Positions 811 through 60,423 are shown, numbered from the stretch's first letter. The stretch: 64,000 bases of DNA from IMGVR_UViG_3300032516_000001:1-64000; one strand, 5' to 3'. Notes: a model not told the origin generated them from the sequence alone. Numbers and translations are program-made.

Positions 811-1380
811 ATGGGACTACATCTTAGGACTCCTAACAGGCCTCATTCAGCTAGAGTATCCAGTGTGGTGATATATGCCCAGGATGGGGGAATATACGAT
901 TTTGGTCGCGGTAAAAATAAATTTCATATTCAGAGTCAAAGGTTTATCATTTTCTCAGTAAGCTGTGAAGGTGTAATGCTGCAATGTGAATTTTCCATTG
1001 AAGAAAGGTGGACAGACTATAAGAGACGACAGAAGGACCTCAGCTGCCGCCCCAGTGCATTCGGGCCTCCTATGGATCACACCATCTGTCTAGCACGAAA
1101 GGAATTTCATCATAATAACGTATTCGGGAATAGCAATGTCAAATATGAGACATGCATGTTAATCAAAGCATTTGATACTGCTTCAAAAGATGTGGCTATG
1201 GATATCTTCCAAATTATATTCCATGAATTGATTCTTAATCCGGAAATCGAGGATTATTTTGAAAATCCGAATCACGAGCCAGGATTCATCGAAACCTGGG
1301 TTCCAGAGTATTTCAAGTCTCGGATTAGGTTAATCATGCAGGAACGGGAGCGAAAGGTCGAGGAAGTTCACAAAGCCTGA
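811..1380 (+). CDS. Hypothetical protein, C-terminal tag family
   Basis: 189 aa ORF ending KVEEVHKA. Confidence 0.6.
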   Translation: MGLHLRTPNRPHSARVSSVVIYAQDGGIYDFGRGKNKFHIQSQRFIIFSVSCEGVMLQCEFSIEERWTDYKRRQKDLSCRPSAFGPPMDHTICLARKEFHHNNVFGNSNVKYETCMLIKAFDTASKDVAMDIFQIIFHELILNPEIEDYFENPNHEPGFIETWVPEYFKSRIRLIMQERERKVEEVHKA

Positions 1381-1411
1381 AAATTTAGCATATTGTTGTG
1401 TACGATAATTT

Positions 1412-1735
1412 ATGAATTTCCTACTGATTCTCTTCCTGATAGTGCTTCCAACTCTCGATGTTTTTAATCAGGGGCCTGAGAGGCTACAGGCGTCTGTCCA
1501 ACCACAGGTAGCACCTGTCAAGGCACAAATCGATTGCTCTGGACTCTTGTCCCAACGAGAATTTGGGCAGATTGATGGTCATCGGATCATGGTGAATGGC
1601 CAGTATGCCGTAGGTCAGTTTATCGGTAAAAGCTTTGTTCCGGTGTTGTACTTTAACACACTGGATGAGGCGACTTCTTGTGCTCCAGATATGGAAGTAG
1701 CTAAGTGGCATAACGGGACTTGGGTACACCCTTAG
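1412..1735 (+). CDS. Hypothetical secreted or membrane-anchored protein
   Basis: Hydrophobic N-terminus MNFLLILFLIVL; TACGAT-N5-ATG upstream. Confidence 0.65.
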   Translation: MNFLLILFLIVLPTLDVFNQGPERLQASVQPQVAPVKAQIDCSGLLSQREFGQIDGHRIMVNGQYAVGQFIGKSFVPVLYFNTLDEATSCAPDMEVAKWHNGTWVHP

Positions 1736-1782
1736 TGTCTAAAAGAAACAACAGCACCAAAAGGAGACGTCAGGTTGAATTA

Positions 1783-2235
1783 ATGAAAGTTAAAAATATA
1801 TATAAAATGCTTGGCATAGCTGGACCGATAGGTCCGATGCCGCAGGTATACAATGGTATTGAATGCGTCGTATCACACTTCAAATCATGCCTTCCGAAAT
1901 TCGTTCAGAGAATTTATTTAATAAGCTTACCAACCGTGTCCATCTTTACATGGAAGGAAGTCATTTACGATGACTCGGAATGGCACGACACAAATGCTTT
2001 CCCGATCAAAATCTTTTGTATTATGCACAGAAGACTATCATGTTCATGTAAGAATTTATATATTTTACATATGTGTCTTGATCCTGATGAAGGCATAGCG
2101 ATTGCTATGGGCGGTAGGCGACAGCCTAATACTTGGCAATACAATCCTCATTCATGGTGTGTGCGCATATGCGCTAAAGAAGCCATGAAAAAGAAAATTG
2201 ATGAGTTTTCAGTTTATCATATACACGAAGCCTAG
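1783..2235 (+). CDS. Hypothetical protein, C-terminal tag family
   Basis: ATG at 1783 preferred; ends SVYHIHEA. Confidence 0.55.
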   Translation: MKVKNIYKMLGIAGPIGPMPQVYNGIECVVSHFKSCLPKFVQRIYLISLPTVSIFTWKEVIYDDSEWHDTNAFPIKIFCIMHRRLSCSCKNLYILHMCLDPDEGIAIAMGGRRQPNTWQYNPHSWCVRICAKEAMKKKIDEFSVYHIHEA

Positions 2236-2251
2236 AATGTAAGTTTTAAAG

Positions 2252-3676
2252 TTGGGTAAAAATTTCAAAGAATTCCCAGACCTGACCGGCGAGAAGTTTG
2301 GTAAATTCACAGTCATATCTTTAGTAAAAGTGGATCCTAATAATGGGCGAATTTGGCTAGTTAGATGCGATTGTGGACAGGAATCATACAAGTCTACTTG
2401 CAAAATTAACACATTAAAGAAAAATAAAACACCAACAGCATGTAATAAATGTCGTGTTAGAGGACGAGATATTACTGGTGAAAAATTTGGCAAATTCACA
2501 GTCATATCTTTGAAAGGCGTTGATGCGAAGAAAGGACGAATTTGGCTAGTTAGATGCGATTGTGGACGGGAATTCCATAAATTTGCGGGACAAATAACCT
2601 CATTAAAGAAACGTACTGCGTTTCCAATGTGCAGGAAGTGTCGTGTTAAACAACGAGATCTAACAGGAACGAAAATCGGTAAATTCACAGTCATCTCTTT
2701 TGACAGGATGGACGAAATCCGAGGTCAAATGTGGCTGATTAGATGTGACTGCGGAAATGAGATATATAAATCTACTGGTGATATTACCGATCTGTCGAAA
2801 CATACCGATCCGGCATGTATTGAATGTGCCAAAATCAGAAGAAAAACGTGGGCGTGTAAAGACATAACGGGACAGAAGTTTGACAAATTAATAGCAATTA
2901 AACCAATTGGCGGTAGCAAATATGGCCAAATGTGGCTAGTTAGATGCGATTGTGGTATTGAGACGCATCGTGTTGTCAGCCAATTGAATGCAGGACGTAA
3001 GGCTGAACGTGGCCAGATGTGTATTGAATGCAGAAATGCAAAATTCGCCGAGAGTAGAGATCGTGGGTCTAGCACTAGTTACAGATTAGATAGAATAAGA
3101 TTAAGAAAGATGGCTGGACCATTAATATTGGAGATGGATCCACTCATAGATCAAAATCTAGGATCGCATGAAGCATTTCGGAATGAGCTAATGTATGATT
3201 TGGAACAGGAAATCTGTCCTCGCCGTGGTTGGCTGGATGAAAGAGAAATTCCCGGGTTGAGTGCAGATTTTGATGACACTATTACAGCTAGCAATTTTCC
3301 GGAATATGTCGATGTAAATATAGAAAGACCGGAAGTACAAATTGAGAACGAATTAGATGAGGATGATGACGAGATGATATACAGAGTTAGGCCAGACGGA
3401 ACTATCGAAACCGACAATGTCGAAGAAGCTTTACGTCTATCTCGTATATTAAGCAATGCTCCTGAGCGGACAAGAGCTACGGAACAAGAAATCATTGATA
3501 CCGTCCAGAGATTCTTTGCAAATCAACAATTCACATCTAAACAGTTGTCCGATAAGTTGGGATTCGATTCGGGTACTGCCGTTAGAGAGGGACTGAGACT
3601 TCTTCACATCAAGAAGTGGATTAAGAAACACAGAAGCAGCGATGGCACATGCTTCGTATGGGAGCTAGTTAAATGA
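2252..3676 (+). CDS. Protein with four DxTGxKFGK..W.xRCDCG repeats and probable C-terminal winged HTH
   Basis: Four ~70-aa repeats of the type found N-terminal to phage HNH/AP2 endonucleases; C-terminus FTSKQLSDKLG..VREGLRLL looks like a wHTH; no nuclease motif seen. Confidence 0.7.
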   Translation: MGKNFKEFPDLTGEKFGKFTVISLVKVDPNNGRIWLVRCDCGQESYKSTCKINTLKKNKTPTACNKCRVRGRDITGEKFGKFTVISLKGVDAKKGRIWLVRCDCGREFHKFAGQITSLKKRTAFPMCRKCRVKQRDLTGTKIGKFTVISFDRMDEIRGQMWLIRCDCGNEIYKSTGDITDLSKHTDPACIECAKIRRKTWACKDITGQKFDKLIAIKPIGGSKYGQMWLVRCDCGIETHRVVSQLNAGRKAERGQMCIECRNAKFAESRDRGSSTSYRLDRIRLRKMAGPLILEMDPLIDQNLGSHEAFRNELMYDLEQEICPRRGWLDEREIPGLSADFDDTITASNFPEYVDVNIERPEVQIENELDEDDDEMIYRVRPDGTIETDNVEEALRLSRILSNAPERTRATEQEIIDTVQRFFANQQFTSKQLSDKLGFDSGTAVREGLRLLHIKKWIKKHRSSDGTCFVWELVK

Positions 3677-59191: not shown

Positions 59192-59461
59192 AGTTGGTTC
59201 TTCTAATTGTTTTATGCGTATTATTTCAGATTCAAGCTGTACCAACTTCTGATGTAATTCAATGTGTTCTGCTTGTAATATGTCAAGTGCTTGGTTTTGT
59301 GCCGCTTTCCAAGTATTATGAACATCAGATTCTCTTATCCATGCACTACCATCTAAGCGCACTCGACCATCTTTATGCCAAGTATCAATATGTCTAGATA
59401 TGCCGATACAATGATCTCTGTTAAAAACCACAATGAAAACGGGTTTTCGCATATTGCGCAT
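59186..59461 (-). CDS. Hypothetical protein
   Basis: ORF within a - strand operon. Confidence 0.55.
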   Translation of the reverse strand: MRNMRKPVFIVVFNRDHCIGISRHIDTWHKDGRVRLDGSAWIRESDVHNTWKAAQNQALDILQAEHIELHQKLVQLESEIIRIKQLEEPTL

Positions 59462-59462
59462 A

Positions 59463-59789
59463 TTATGCCTCCATCACCAATATCATCACAATGTGATCAG
59501 GGACCAGATCATGGAAATATTTACTAGTAGTTGCTATTTTATTTCTTTCAGATGGCGATAAGTTTCTAGCCGCTCTAATTGCATCTCGATAGCCATTAGC
59601 ATCAATATTTTCAGAAAGACAAATCCTCATCGCTTTTCGCATAAGTTCAGTAACATCAACTTTTTCTTCTTCTTTTCGTTCTTTCTTATCAAGCACATTT
59701 ATTTCTTTTGCACATCCAACCTCTTTGATATCGGATACAGCACATAAATGACAACAAGCAATTTCCAGAGCCGTTTCACCTGTGCTCAT
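59463..59789 (-). CDS. Hypothetical protein, C-terminal tag family
   Basis: Ends IVMILVMEA. Confidence 0.6.
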   Translation of the reverse strand: MSTGETALEIACCHLCAVSDIKEVGCAKEINVLDKKERKEEEKVDVTELMRKAMRICLSENIDANGYRDAIRAARNLSPSERNKIATTSKYFHDLVPDHIVMILVMEA

Positions 59790-59977
59790 GAATCGATGCC
59801 TTCAACCCACCAATAATGATTACATTTTGTACATGTGTATTTATAATCTTCATAGCCACCGCATTTTGATTCCCATTTCTTCACACGGACTTCGCCTCCG
59901 CACTTCGGGCAAGACCGTTCTGATTTTTCATCCTCTGCAAATACTCCAGCGCTCTCAGGCATTGGTGCTATATGCAT
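59786..59977 (-). CDS. Zn-ribbon protein (TFIIS-like fold)
   Basis: CPKCGG..WES..EDYKYTCTKCNHYWW. Confidence 0.7.
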   Translation of the reverse strand: MHIAPMPESAGVFAEDEKSERSCPKCGGEVRVKKWESKCGGYEDYKYTCTKCNHYWWVEGIDS

Positions 59978-59983
59978 ACATCC

Positions 59984-60166
59984 TCACAGGTCATGGATCT
60001 CTTTACAGATTTTTTGATTTTCTTCATCCTGAACTTCTAACCGATTTAATTTTATGAAATGTCGTCGTACGATGAATCTACCAAAATAATCTGCTGTTAT
60101 CGACGTTGTAAACAAAAATACGGACAGAATGATAACCACGCAAAGCATACTTTGACCATCAAGCAT
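59984..60166 (-). CDS. Small membrane protein, C-terminal tag family
   Basis: TM helix; ends ICKEIHDL. Confidence 0.55.
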   Translation of the reverse strand: MLDGQSMLCVVIILSVFLFTTSITADYFGRFIVRRHFIKLNRLEVQDEENQKICKEIHDL

Positions 60167-60423
60167 TATTCATCCATCACGAGTTTTACTACCACATTCC
60201 GTAACCCTTCAGAAACCATTTCATTGAAATATTTGCTTTTCATTGCAATATCACAAAGTTTGTCTAGGTTAAATGTCCTTCCGTCATCTATGGCGTGTCT
60301 ATATGTTTGTAGATCAATTTTATCTCTTACACAAATCGTAGTGGCTTTACGCACAGCGTCGATATAATTAGAATTAACTTCATTAAGTCCTGTTGATACA
60401 TTAATACCATAGACCTTCCCCAA
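60166..60423 (-). CDS. Hypothetical protein, C-terminal tag family (start uncertain)
   Basis: Ends VVKLVMDE. Confidence 0.5.
   Translation of the reverse strand: MGKVYGINVSTGLNEVNSNYIDAVRKATTICVRDKIDLQTYRHAIDDGRTFNLDKLCDIAMKSKYFNEMVSEGLRNVVVKLVMDE

What the first reader, a model, noticed from the sequence alone, without database searches (positions are those of the whole stretch)
811..60423. A shared C-terminal tag, hydrophobic-x-x-[V/I]-[M/H]-x-x-COOH, on 17 mostly unrelated small proteins
Seen: ORF ends KVEEVHKA (1380), SVYHIHEA (2235), MVSNVMDG (4284), ALYTVMAS (5178), IVAGIMTS (8874), LALVVMNS (14688), GIKEIMES (14683), PIKGVMDS (15244), PVTGVMSI (15566), KVMKVMNE (25167), EVLRVMSE (25462), KVMQVMAA (26528), MMEEIMNE (26818), IINDVMKS (59191), VMILVMEA (59463), ICKEIHDL (59984), VVKLVMDE (60166). 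M or H is always at -3 and V/I at -4, often with an acidic residue near -10. None of the recognisable core enzymes has it. An internal copy (IVREVMEES) lies in 16538..16903. Inference: a terminal helical sorting or docking signal, for example for capsid loading and ejection, import into a phage compartment, or binding to one hub protein or protease adaptor. This would mark a whole class of accessory effectors.
Basis: partly seen in the sequence, partly recalled or inferred. Interest (0 to 1): 0.88.

Follow-up and report, generated by a model that had tools for sequence, protein, structure and literature searches.

The report
Shared C-terminal tag in huge phages
About one in six genes in this stretch of a huge (at least 323 kb) uncultured phage, and up to half the genes in parts of related huge phages, encode otherwise unrelated small proteins of unknown function that all end in the same roughly 14-residue helix (…V-x-x-V-M-E-S-end), an undescribed address-label-like signal whose reader is still unknown.

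Summary
All 17 C-termini are as stated. In my 105-gene set, [VI][MH] sits at -4/-3 in 17 genes and in at most 2 at any other offset (P=4e-18). After collapsing paralogs, about 11 independent families remain (P=2e-10).

The motif replicates in 27 loci from related huge phages chosen without reference to it: 50 of 396 genes against 2.3 expected (P=1e-49). One 436 kb phage has it on 64 of 153 sampled genes.

The full motif spans about 14 residues: [S/T]-L-polar-E-A-Φ-V-x-E-V-[M/H/Q/L]-[E/D]-S-COOH. Selection acts on the peptide, because synonymous codons follow genome usage, Ser uses both TCN and AGY, GC ranges 36-60%, and spacing to the next gene varies. RBS and RNA explanations fail.

Carriers are small, soluble, Cys-rich and almost never annotatable (2 of 150 with a Pfam hit). 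AlphaFold2 makes the tag a terminal helix. In a 104-member family, Met(-3) is among the three most conserved columns.

The best reading is a C-terminus-anchored docking signal for one shared receptor. Its purpose (turnover or chaperone handling, or virion or compartment loading) is unresolved.

The parts
811..1380 (+). tagged ORF, 189 aa, ends KVEEVHKA (His variant)
   Evidence: called in public assembly; auxiliary motif score 6.7, above all but 1 of 106 internal sites
1720..2235 (+). tagged ORF, 171 aa (public call starts later, 150 aa), ends SVYHIHEA (His variant)
   Evidence: auxiliary score 9.2
3673..4284 (+). tagged ORF, 203 aa, ends MVSNVMDG; no gene follows on the same strand
   Evidence: auxiliary score 5.2
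4888..5178 (+). tagged ORF, 96 aa, ends ALYTVMAS; marginal member of zinc-knuckle family A
   Evidence: leave-one-out E=0.03, top hit; auxiliary score -1.9
8560..8874 (+). tagged ORF, 104 aa, ends IVAGIMTS; best match in the window to the clade-wide motif
   Evidence: auxiliary score 12.2
14272..14688 (+). tagged ORF, 138 aa, ends LALVVMNS
   Evidence: auxiliary score -0.1
14683..14868 (-). doubtful tagged ORF, 61 aa, ends GIKEIMES; its stop overlaps that of 14272-14688 at a palindromic TCATGA
   Evidence: not called in public assemblies; auxiliary score -0.8
14900..15244 (+). tagged ORF, 114 aa, ends PIKGVMDS; paralog of the next gene
   Evidence: (33% identity, E=7e-10)
15246..15566 (+). tagged ORF, 106 aa, ends PVTGVMSI; paralog of the previous gene; followed by the tRNA
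   Evidence: weak auxiliary score -4.7
24799..25167 (+). tagged ORF, 122 aa, family A, ends KVMKVMNE; outside homologs keep the same tail
   Evidence: (P0006 and P0007 end ...KVMKVMNE at 39-71% identity)
25160..25462 (+). tagged ORF, 100 aa, family A, ends EVLRVMSE; AF2 gives a beta core, a flexible linker and a terminal helix at 89-99
26184..26528 (+). tagged ORF, 114 aa, family A, ends KVMQVMAA
26525..26818 (+). tagged ORF, 97 aa, family A, ends MMEEIMNE (motif register repeated one helical turn earlier)
58925..59191 (+). tagged ORF, 88 aa, ends IINDVMKS; lies in a variable island between the primase-like and DnaB genes
59463..59789 (-). tagged ORF, 108 aa, ends VMILVMEA; paralog of 60166-60423
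   Evidence: (E=2.5e-8); weak auxiliary score -7.1
59984..60166 (-). tagged ORF, 60 aa, ends ICKEIHDL (His variant); hydrophobic N-terminus
   Evidence: auxiliary score 5.6
60166..60423 (-). tagged ORF, 85 aa, ends VVKLVMDE
16670..16714 (-). buried internal copy of the tag (residues 64-78, ...EERIVREVMEES) inside the 121-aa ORF 16538-16903, followed by 43 more residues
   Evidence: auxiliary score 12.2, the only outlier among internal sites
10343..10591 (+). possible 18th carrier under the widened motif [VI][MHQ]xx: 82 aa, ends KMVQMA
   Evidence: auxiliary score 0.13, above the 99th percentile of internal sites; Gln at -3 is used in relatives

Best explanation
The motif is a protein-level recognition signal. 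It is a helix of about 14 residues that must end exactly two residues after the Met/His/Gln/Leu position. It has been attached to, or retained on, many unrelated small soluble accessory proteins of one clade of huge phages.

The strict register to the free C-terminus, the invariant hydrophobic trio (V-7, V-4, M-3) and the acidic/small ending ([E/D]-S) point to one shared receptor that reads the helix together with the terminal carboxylate. These steps are shown: the signal exists, it is selected at the peptide level, it is conserved, it is helical, its register is fixed, and its carriers are unrelated.

The rest is inferred. My best guess at what the receptor does is controlled handling of a large, fast-evolving set of accessory proteins in the cytoplasm. 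That would be either a C-degron read by an ATP-dependent protease or adaptor, or a handle for a chaperone such as the DnaJ that is conserved next to the polymerase in this clade. Of the 0.55 confidence in the docking-signal claim, I put roughly 0.3 on turnover or chaperone handling, 0.2 on cargo loading (listed as a rival) and the rest on another hub.
For: - Stop-anchored spike at -3 only.
- Replication in 27 loci not selected for the tag: 50 of 396 genes against 2.3 expected, P=1e-49. Counts by genome: 64/153, 18/77, 12/72, 12/50, 8/50, 11/32, 11/29 and 17/43.
- The sharp form EVMES+stop hits one 436 kb contig 15 times and five other huge-phage contigs 11 times, while the EVMES+Trp control never hits a contig twice.
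- Positions not used for selection carry information: V/I at -7 in 80% (2.2 bits), S at -1 in 64%, E/D at -2 in 62%, E at -5 and -10, S/T at -13. The signal is gone by -15, and untagged termini are flat.
- Peptide-level selection: codons at -2, -5 and -7 follow genome usage, Ser uses TCN and AGY, gaps to the next gene run from -4 to over 600 nt, and GC ranges 36-60%.
- 144 carriers fall into 136 clusters without tails.
- In a 104-member family, 83 members end [VI][MHQ]xx and 14 more end V-L-xx, all in the same register, and Met(-3) is the third most conserved column.
- Orthologs of g24799 at 39% identity keep KVMKVMNE.
- AF2 gives a terminal helix at 89-99/100 after a low-confidence linker, and at 221-240/241 at pLDDT 94. 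Pro+Gly is 2.8% in the last 12 residues against 11.4% in untagged proteins.
- Carriers have few TM-like segments (4/142 against 35/325) and are Cys-rich (P=2e-9).
- In the window, no gene over 210 aa or with a Pfam hit carries the tag; in the relatives the longest carrier is 316 aa and 2 of 150 carriers have a Pfam hit, one probably by chance.
- DnaJ is conserved beside the polymerase in the window, L002 and L003.
Against: - No receptor was identified. No PDZ, TPR, Clp or Lon module appears among the 25 most frequent Pfam families in tag-rich regions (only 25 of 87 families were listed).
- The helical hydrophobic moment of the tag is no higher than background, so 'amphipathic docking helix' is not established.
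- AF2 places the terminal helix with fairly high confidence in both models, which could mean it packs on its own domain rather than being free.
- No evidence on timing or stability. No promoter k-mer separates tagged from untagged genes.
- The acidic ending differs from known bacterial C-degrons, which are non-polar or basic (own knowledge).
- Within the window's own genome the tag is patchy: 1 of 33 genes at 209.7-230.6 kb.
Confidence: 0.55

Rival explanations
1. The tag is a cargo-loading signal. It docks carriers onto the scaffold, portal or inner capsid surface, or onto the shell of another phage-built compartment. A large arsenal of small proteins would then be packaged and co-injected, or sequestered.
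For: There is precedent for diverse proteins that share only a short targeting peptide. [quoted passage not shown] Encapsulin cargo uses C-terminal targeting peptides (PMC7925596). [quoted passage not shown] Huge capsids have room, carriers are small and soluble, and no enzyme carries the tag.
Against: The tag is strictly anchored to the C-terminus. T4 CTS is N-terminal and cleaved, and BMC peptides occur at either end. Carriers lie among replication and nucleotide-metabolism genes, not in a recognisable head module. The number of distinct carriers (about 40% of sampled genes in one phage) is far beyond any known packaged set. No shell, scaffold or capsid gene was seen beside them. No proteomic data exist.
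Confidence: 0.22
2. The motif is a self-contained structural or assembly element with no common external receptor. It could be a C-terminal helix that caps the carrier's own fold, or one through which carriers homo- or hetero-oligomerise with one another.
For: AF2 gives the terminal helix pLDDT of about 84-92 in both models. A secondary [VI][MH] peak at -6 and repeats such as KVMKVM suggest a periodic helical pattern.
Against: Unrelated folds (a beta-rich 100-aa protein, a 241-aa alpha/beta protein, many others) would not all need the same 14 residues for internal packing. Information ends at -15, so there is no shared domain. The fixed two-residue ending and the preference for [E/D]-S have no obvious role in self-packing. 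Twelve residues is short for a stable coiled coil.
Confidence: 0.1
3. All carriers descend from one ancient, hyper-diverged protein superfamily, and the C-terminal helix is simply its only surviving conserved segment (deep paralogy rather than a portable tag).
For: Phage accessory proteins diverge fast. Several local paralog groups exist. Many carriers are Cys-rich, and some share zinc-knuckle-like patterns.
Against: Lengths range from 44 to 316 aa, and the two AF2 models have different secondary-structure layouts. There are 136 clusters for 144 proteins. The family-A profile recruits no other carrier. Even if this were true, it would not explain why only this helix and its register are conserved, so a function for the tag is still required.
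Confidence: 0.08
4. The pattern is imposed by a nucleotide-level signal at gene 3' ends (the downstream ribosome-binding site GGAGGTGAT, an ATGA overlap, an RNA hairpin or a terminator), or it is chance plus post-hoc motif choice.
For: GTG is over-used at -4 in the window (7 of 12 Val against 18% genome-wide). TCA-TGA is over-used at the end, and GUC-AUG-GAA-UCA-UGA could form a 5-bp hairpin.
Against: ATG is anchored to the stop (-9 nt), not to the next start, and gaps run from -8 to over 600 nt, including convergent gene pairs. Internal Val-Met pairs use GTG 25% of the time, so the excess is marginal after paralog collapse. The TCA-TGA excess is explained by ATGA overlaps (30 of 43 open an ORF of at least 40 codons), and Ser codons are mixed with TAA or TAG stops. 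The peptide is kept with AGC/AGT Ser codons, with TAG/TAA stops, and across 36-60% GC. Chance is excluded by replication in unseen loci (P=1e-49).
Confidence: 0.02

Closest known systems
Capsid targeting sequence (CTS) of T4-type internal proteins
   Same: A short conserved terminal peptide is the only thing shared by a diverse, fast-evolving set of small phage proteins. It addresses them to one destination (PMC3012670).
   Different: The CTS is N-terminal, about 10 residues, and is removed by the prohead protease. It marks a handful of proteins, whereas this tag is C-terminal, about 14 residues, marks dozens to probably hundreds of proteins per genome, and has no sequence resemblance to the CTS.
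Encapsulin cargo-loading (targeting) peptides
   Same: A short C-terminal peptide on unrelated cargo is read by an HK97-fold shell related to phage capsids (PMC7925596).
   Different: The consensus differs (Gly/Ser/Leu-rich and extended, from own knowledge, against a helical acidic V-x-x-V-M-E-S). Encapsulin cargo genes sit next to the shell gene and are few. No shell gene was seen beside the tagged genes.
Bacterial microcompartment encapsulation peptides
   Same: A short helix is joined to the cargo by a disordered linker (PMC12339742, PMC4594438). This matches the linker-plus-terminal-helix layout of g25160.
   Different: BMC peptides occur at either terminus without a fixed register to the chain end. 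They mark fewer than about ten enzymes and co-occur with BMC shell genes, none of which were found here.
C-terminal degrons and carboxylate-anchored peptide ligands (ssrA/ClpX-type tags, PDZ ligands, the EEVD tail read by TPR co-chaperones and class B J-proteins)
   Same: Recognition depends on a fixed distance to the free C-terminus, as the exact register here implies. The acidic ending with one hydrophobic residue loosely recalls EEVD, and the phage clade encodes a conserved DnaJ.
   Different: Known bacterial C-degrons end in non-polar or basic residues, and PDZ ligands end in a hydrophobic residue (own knowledge). The tag here carries information over about 14 residues and is helical. No binding data exist.

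Membership tests
T4-type capsid targeting sequence | Located at the N-terminus and removed by the prohead protease | tested here: not met
   The signal is anchored to the C-terminus; N-terminal conservation among carriers was not examined.
T4-type capsid targeting sequence | Carriers are found inside the virion | not testable with these tools
   The phages are uncultured and no proteomic data are available.
Encapsulin cargo-loading peptide | C-terminal peptide on cargo encoded beside an encapsulin shell gene | tested here: not met
   The position is C-terminal, but Pfam annotation of the window and of 150 neighbouring proteins listed no encapsulin or HK97 shell gene next to carriers (only the top 25 of 87 families were shown).
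Encapsulin cargo-loading peptide | Gly/Ser/Leu-rich extended consensus | tested here: not met
   The profile is V-x-E-V-[MHQ]-[ED]-S, helical, with Pro+Gly at 2.8%. The encapsulin consensus is recalled from own knowledge.
BMC encapsulation peptide | Short helix joined to the cargo by a flexible linker | tested here: inconclusive
   g25160 shows a low-confidence linker (68-84) followed by a helix at 89-99. Family B shows a confident 20-residue terminal helix without an obvious linker. The hydrophobic moment is not elevated.
BMC encapsulation peptide | Co-occurrence with BMC shell proteins | tested here: not met
   No BMC shell domains appear in any Pfam listing obtained.
ssrA/ClpX-type C-terminal degron | Recognition anchored to the free C-terminus | tested here: met
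   The register is fixed. The spike is at -3 only, and 101 of 104 members of one family have V/I exactly at -4. This shows anchoring, not degradation.
ssrA/ClpX-type C-terminal degron | Non-polar (LAA-like) or basic last residues; carrier is degraded | tested here: not met
   The last two residues are mostly [E/D]-[S/A]. Degradation itself is not testable here.
PDZ-type C-terminal ligand | Hydrophobic residue at the last position | tested here: not met
   Position -1 is Ser in 64% and hydrophobic in only 21%.
Shine-Dalgarno / translational-coupling footprint | Fixed distance to the downstream start codon, with nucleotide rather than amino-acid conservation | tested here: not met
   Distance to the next start is variable, and synonymous codons are free.

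The most novel reading that the evidence does not exclude
A clade of huge phages runs a proteome-scale address code. A dedicated receptor reads a C-terminus-anchored helix of about 14 residues and so handles a hundred or more unrelated, fast-evolving ORFan proteins per genome as one class. For example, it could load them into the giant capsid as a co-injected arsenal, or clear or chaperone them on a schedule. This would be a way of organising accessory proteins that is not known in any virus.
Probability: 0.45. Interest if true: 0.92.

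Novelty: new variant of a known kind. Interest (0 to 1): 0.87.

Why it matters
Most genes of huge phages are unannotatable ORFans. This tag sorts a large share of them into one functional class: 16% of genes in this window and 40-50% in parts of related genomes. 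It does so with a rule simple enough to apply to any metagenome.

If the tag proves to be a portable loading signal or degron, it would also be a compact tool for engineering. Searches of the literature and of Pfam, PHROGs, PDB and BFVD found no earlier description.

Tried and rejected
- **Downstream RBS footprint** (GGAGGTGAT / GTGATG). Rejected: the ATG is anchored to the stop, not to the next start, and the GTG excess is marginal after paralog collapse.
- **TCA-TGA excess, TCATGA palindrome or a mini-hairpin as an RNA signal.** The excess is explained by ordinary ATGA overlaps, and the peptide persists with other Ser codons and other stops.
- **TGA stop enrichment.** This was an artefact of the pattern-seeded loci and is absent in unbiased loci.
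- **Chance or post-hoc motif choice.** Rejected by offset controls and by replication in unseen loci.
- **Simple paralogy.** It reduces 17 to about 11 families but does not remove the signal.
- **Shared promoter or regulon.** No k-mer separates tagged from untagged upstream regions.
- **Amphipathicity.** The helical hydrophobic moment is not above background.
- **Function from homology or fold.** PHROGs and Pfam give essentially nothing for carriers. The PDB profile search and the Foldseek searches of PDB and BFVD give no significant hit for either model.
- **Distant 485 kb GenBank relative (LR745208.1).** No tags in 37 genes around its polymerase. This is uninformative, because the equivalent window region is also untagged.
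- **Technical failures.** Two encoding-contig look-ups were wasted because I trimmed the stop at the wrong end of minus-strand genes. The word-indexed search with family B found only its own members.
- **Receptor search.** A DUF2201 (VWA/metallopeptidase-like) protein lies beside tag clusters in four relatives, but not in the parts of the window genome or the 436 kb phage that I hold. It remains a weak lead only.

Full report
**1. Checking the observation**

All 17 quoted peptides are the last eight residues of ORFs ending at the stated coordinates. I built a gene set from codon usage (105 genes, 92% coding), and it contains all 17. Public gene calls on other assemblies of the same phage contain 16 of them. 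The 61-aa ORF at 14683-14868(-) is not called and is doubtful.

In the 105 genes, [VI][MH] occupies -4/-3 in 17 cases and no more than 2 at any of 29 other offsets (P=3.9e-18). In an unbiased scan of 300 position-residue pairs, M at -3 (16 against 2.4 expected, P=3e-9) and V at -4 (P=6e-6) rank first and second.

- {14900,15246} and {59463,60166} are paralog pairs.
- {4888,24799,25160,26184,26525} share a zinc-knuckle core (C..H...C-x-x-H) as well as the tail.
- About 11 independent families remain, still P=2e-10.

All carriers are 210 aa or shorter (17/74 against 0/31, P=0.0025), and none has a Pfam hit, against 27 of 88 untagged genes (P=0.005).

**2. What genome this is**

The window is the first 64 kb of IMG/VR contig IMGVR_UViG_3300032516_000001 (241.6 kb). 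The same phage occurs on a 323 kb ENA contig. It has no close relative in GenBank phages.

It encodes a family A DNA polymerase, a DnaB-like helicase, a RecA-like protein, RtcB, ribosomal protein L7/L12, peptidyl-tRNA hydrolase, a full-length DnaJ plus a second J-domain protein, two Mom-like proteins, and several homing endonucleases.

Relatives with 57-61% polymerase identity are 377 and 427 kb contigs with conserved gene order. The tagged genes at 58.9-60.4 kb lie in a variable island. In the 427 kb relative the same slot holds two unrelated small ORFs that also carry the tag.

**3. Nucleotide-level or peptide-level signal?**

My first suspicion was a footprint of the downstream ribosome-binding site, because many ends read GTG-ATG. 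That does not hold:
- The ATG is anchored 9 nt before the stop, while the distance to the next start varies from -8 to +31 nt, and some neighbours are convergent.
- Internal Val-Met pairs use GTG 25% of the time, so the GTG excess is marginal once paralogs are collapsed.
- In relatives, the codons at -2, -5 and -7 follow genome usage, Ser is encoded by both TCN and AGY, gaps to the next gene range from -4 to over 600 nt, and GC ranges from 36 to 60%.
- The one real nucleotide bias, TCA-TGA at the end, is explained by ordinary ATGA start/stop overlaps: 30 of 43 open a downstream ORF of at least 40 codons. It disappears with TAA or TAG stops.

Selection is therefore on the peptide.

**4. Replication and extent**

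A scan seeded on the multi-copy GIY-YIG endonuclease, together with the polymerase scan, gave 27 loci chosen without reference to the tag. Of their 396 genes, 50 have [VI][MH] at -4/-3 against 2.3 expected (P=1.4e-49), and no other offset exceeds 4.

Tag use differs between genomes:

| Locus or genome | Tagged genes |
|---|---|
| 436 kb phage, one 20 kb stretch (L045) | 21 of 36 |
| 436 kb phage, all sampled | 64 of 153 |
| L028 (376 kb contig) | 8 of 37 |
| L020 (362 kb contig) | 7 of 32 |
| L234 (128 kb contig, seeded on a tagged family) | 11 of 29 |
| L235 (98 kb contig, seeded on a tagged family) | 17 of 43, plus 6 V-L-x-S |
| L031 (same genome as the window, 209.7-230.6 kb) | 1 of 33 |

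DNA encoding E-V-M-E-S followed by TGA occurs 79 times in IMG/VR. About 26 of these lie in six huge-phage contigs, 15 of them in one. The control with Trp in place of the stop gave at least 120 hits and never two in one contig.

**5. Anatomy of the motif**

The profile comes from 136 non-redundant carriers:

| Position | Residues |
|---|---|
| -13 | S/A/T |
| -12 | L |
| -11 | polar (hydrophobic in only 8%) |
| -10 | E 36% |
| -9 | A |
| -8 | I/V/L |
| -7 | V 63%, I 17% (2.2 bits) |
| -5 | E 38% |
| -4 | V/I (selection criterion) |
| -3 | M 77%, H 14%, Q 8% (selection criterion) |
| -2 | E 45%, D 17% |
| -1 | S 64% |

Leu also occurs at -3 in some families. Information is gone by -15, and untagged C-termini are flat.

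A scoring matrix trained only on other genomes, and only on positions not used for selection, separates the window's 17 termini from its untagged ones (median 2.7 against -10.6, P=4e-9). Thirteen of the 17 exceed the 99th percentile of internal [VI][MH]xx sites. The same score picks out the internal copy in 16538-16903 as the sole internal outlier. It is probably a former tag buried by a 43-residue extension.

The S/T at -13 with E at -10 is a helix capping box, and Pro+Gly falls to 2.8% in the last 12 residues against 11.4%. AlphaFold2 gives:
- g25160: a beta core, a low-confidence linker, and a terminal helix at 89-99 of 100 residues.
- A 241-aa carrier modelled with 104 homologs (pLDDT 94): a terminal helix at 221-240.

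The helical hydrophobic moment is not above background, so I do not call the helix amphipathic.

**6. Who carries it**

With tails removed, 144 carriers form 136 BLAST clusters. Their lengths run from 44 to 316 aa (median 98). They rarely have TM-like segments (4/142 against 35/325) and are Cys-rich (2.9% against 1.6%, P=2e-9).

Of 150 carriers, 2 have any Pfam hit and 7 any PHROG hit. By contrast, 150 untagged neighbours hit 87 Pfam families, mostly replication and repair enzymes, DnaJ, sigma factors, and DUF2201/VWA and AAA+ proteins.

Where families span genomes, the tag is kept:
- Orthologs of g24799 at 39% identity retain KVMKVMNE.
- In a family of 120 representatives, 83 of 104 full-length members end [VI][MHQ]xx and 14 more end V-L-xx, all in the same register.
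- In that family Met(-3) is the third most conserved column, after a Trp and the initiator Met.

Neither model has a significant neighbour in PDB or BFVD.

**7. How it most likely works**

These points are shown:
- The signal is a helix of about 14 residues, selected at the peptide level.
- Its distance to the chain end is fixed.
- It is conserved under divergence.
- It sits on many unrelated small soluble proteins and on no recognisable enzyme.

The rest is inferred. One receptor probably reads the helix together with the free carboxylate, because only such reading explains the exact register and the conserved [E/D]-S ending.

What the receptor does is open. I lean slightly towards cytoplasmic handling, meaning a degron or a chaperone handle. 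My reasons are the carboxylate anchoring, the very large number of carriers, their location among replication-type genes, and the conserved phage DnaJ. Cargo loading into the capsid or another compartment is nearly as likely and has the better precedents: the T4 capsid targeting sequence (PMC3012670), encapsulin targeting peptides (PMC7925596) and BMC encapsulation peptides (PMC12339742, PMC4594438). Import into a replication compartment is least likely, since no replication enzyme is tagged. Self-association and deep paralogy cannot be excluded, but neither explains the register.

**8. Comparison with known systems, and novelty**

The tag behaves like a terminal targeting peptide or C-degron, but it fails the defining features of each known family I could test: terminus, consensus sequence, neighbouring shell genes, and nature of the last residues. 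Details are in the membership table.

Full-text searches and the Pfam, PHROGs, PDB and BFVD libraries gave no earlier description. I therefore class it as a new variant of a known kind, the shared terminal address peptide. It is unusual in its scale and in its restriction to a clade of uncultured huge phages.

**9. Limits**

- Gene calls are my own heuristic. They were cross-checked against public calls only for the window.
- Loci from the pattern scan are biased towards TCN-TGA endings and were excluded from the unbiased statistics.
- Only parts of each genome were available.
- Model coordinates could not be inspected.
- There are no expression, proteomic or binding data.

Noticed in passing
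window 15604-15679 (+): A suppressor-type tRNA with anticodon TTA (reads UAA), found by ARAGORN and confirmed as a tRNA by Rfam (64 bits). It lies directly after the tagged paralog pair. With the standard code the window is 92% coding, and 39 of 105 genes, including RtcB and DnaJ, end in TAA, so there is no sign of TAA recoding here. Its role (late code switch, or read-through of particular genes) is open.
   Followed up: partly
window, upstream of many starts (e.g. 1412, 2252, 6358, 14272, 14900, 16903-, 17358-, 18541, 20001): Shine-Dalgarno use is weak (40 of 104 genes have an SD-like 4-mer). The most enriched upstream 4-mers are TGTA, GTAA and GTAT, forming an (A/T)TGTA(A/T) element about 13-17 nt before the start codon. 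It may be a promoter for short-leader transcripts or an unusual initiation signal. The 436 kb relative, by contrast, shows GGAGGT/AGGTGA upstream.
   Followed up: partly
window position 1 (= contig ends): Three independent assemblies (IMG/VR 241.6 kb, ENA 323 kb, ENA 58 kb) all end within about 21 bp of the window start. This suggests a physical genome end or a repeat boundary. The tag-rich region at 0.8-27 kb lies next to it, reminiscent of terminal early or host-takeover regions in other large phages.
   Followed up: no
window 27727-28599, 29515-30231, 44038-45102 (-), 51085-52161 (-); also 41175-42074 (-): There are four GIY-YIG homing-endonuclease paralogs (45-70% identical) plus a LAGLIDADG endonuclease in 64 kb. 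Gene calls for this region differ between assemblies of the same phage (255, 287 and 316 aa products in L006, L007 and L008), which suggests that these elements are mobile.
   Followed up: partly
window 22504-22884 (+): A phage-encoded ribosomal protein L7/L12. Its eight closest bacterial homologs (60-64% identity) are all Myxococcota or 'Deltaproteobacteria' MAGs, and the next group is at 54% or lower. This is a weak hint at the host lineage.
   Followed up: partly
window 56536-57600 (+) and 45545-45880 (-): A full-length DnaJ (J domain, zinc finger, C-terminal domains) lies next to the DNA polymerase and is conserved in L002 and L003. There is also a second small J-domain protein. These are possible client-binding hubs for the tag, but this is untested.
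   Followed up: no
window 32485-34338 (+) and 55014-56528 (+): Two large paralogous proteins combine an REase_MTES_1575-like domain with a Mom-like domain, and one also has a treble-clef zinc finger. They suggest DNA modification of the Mom type.
   Followed up: no
L015 6556-9669 (just beyond the window end, ENA contig k141_3054732): An SNF2-family helicase of 1037 aa carries Hom_end/LAGLIDADG_3 hits, which suggests an intein. It follows two very large ORFs (1447 and 1537 aa) with no Pfam hit.
   Followed up: no
L020 10919-12499, L057 1018-2550, L234 656-2317, L235 1-1167: A DUF2201_N/DUF2201 (putative metallopeptidase plus VWA-like) protein recurs beside tag-rich gene clusters in four related genomes. 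It was not found in the parts of the window genome or the 436 kb phage that I hold.
   Followed up: partly
window 203-646 (-) and 50306-50563 (+): Two otherwise unrelated ORFs share a 29-residue segment at 79% identity (E=3e-12).
   Followed up: no
window 14683-14688: The convergent ORFs 14272-14688 (+) and 14683-14868 (-) overlap by 6 nt at a palindromic TCATGA, so each strand reads Ser-stop. Both end in the tag, but the minus-strand ORF is not called in public assemblies.
   Followed up: partly
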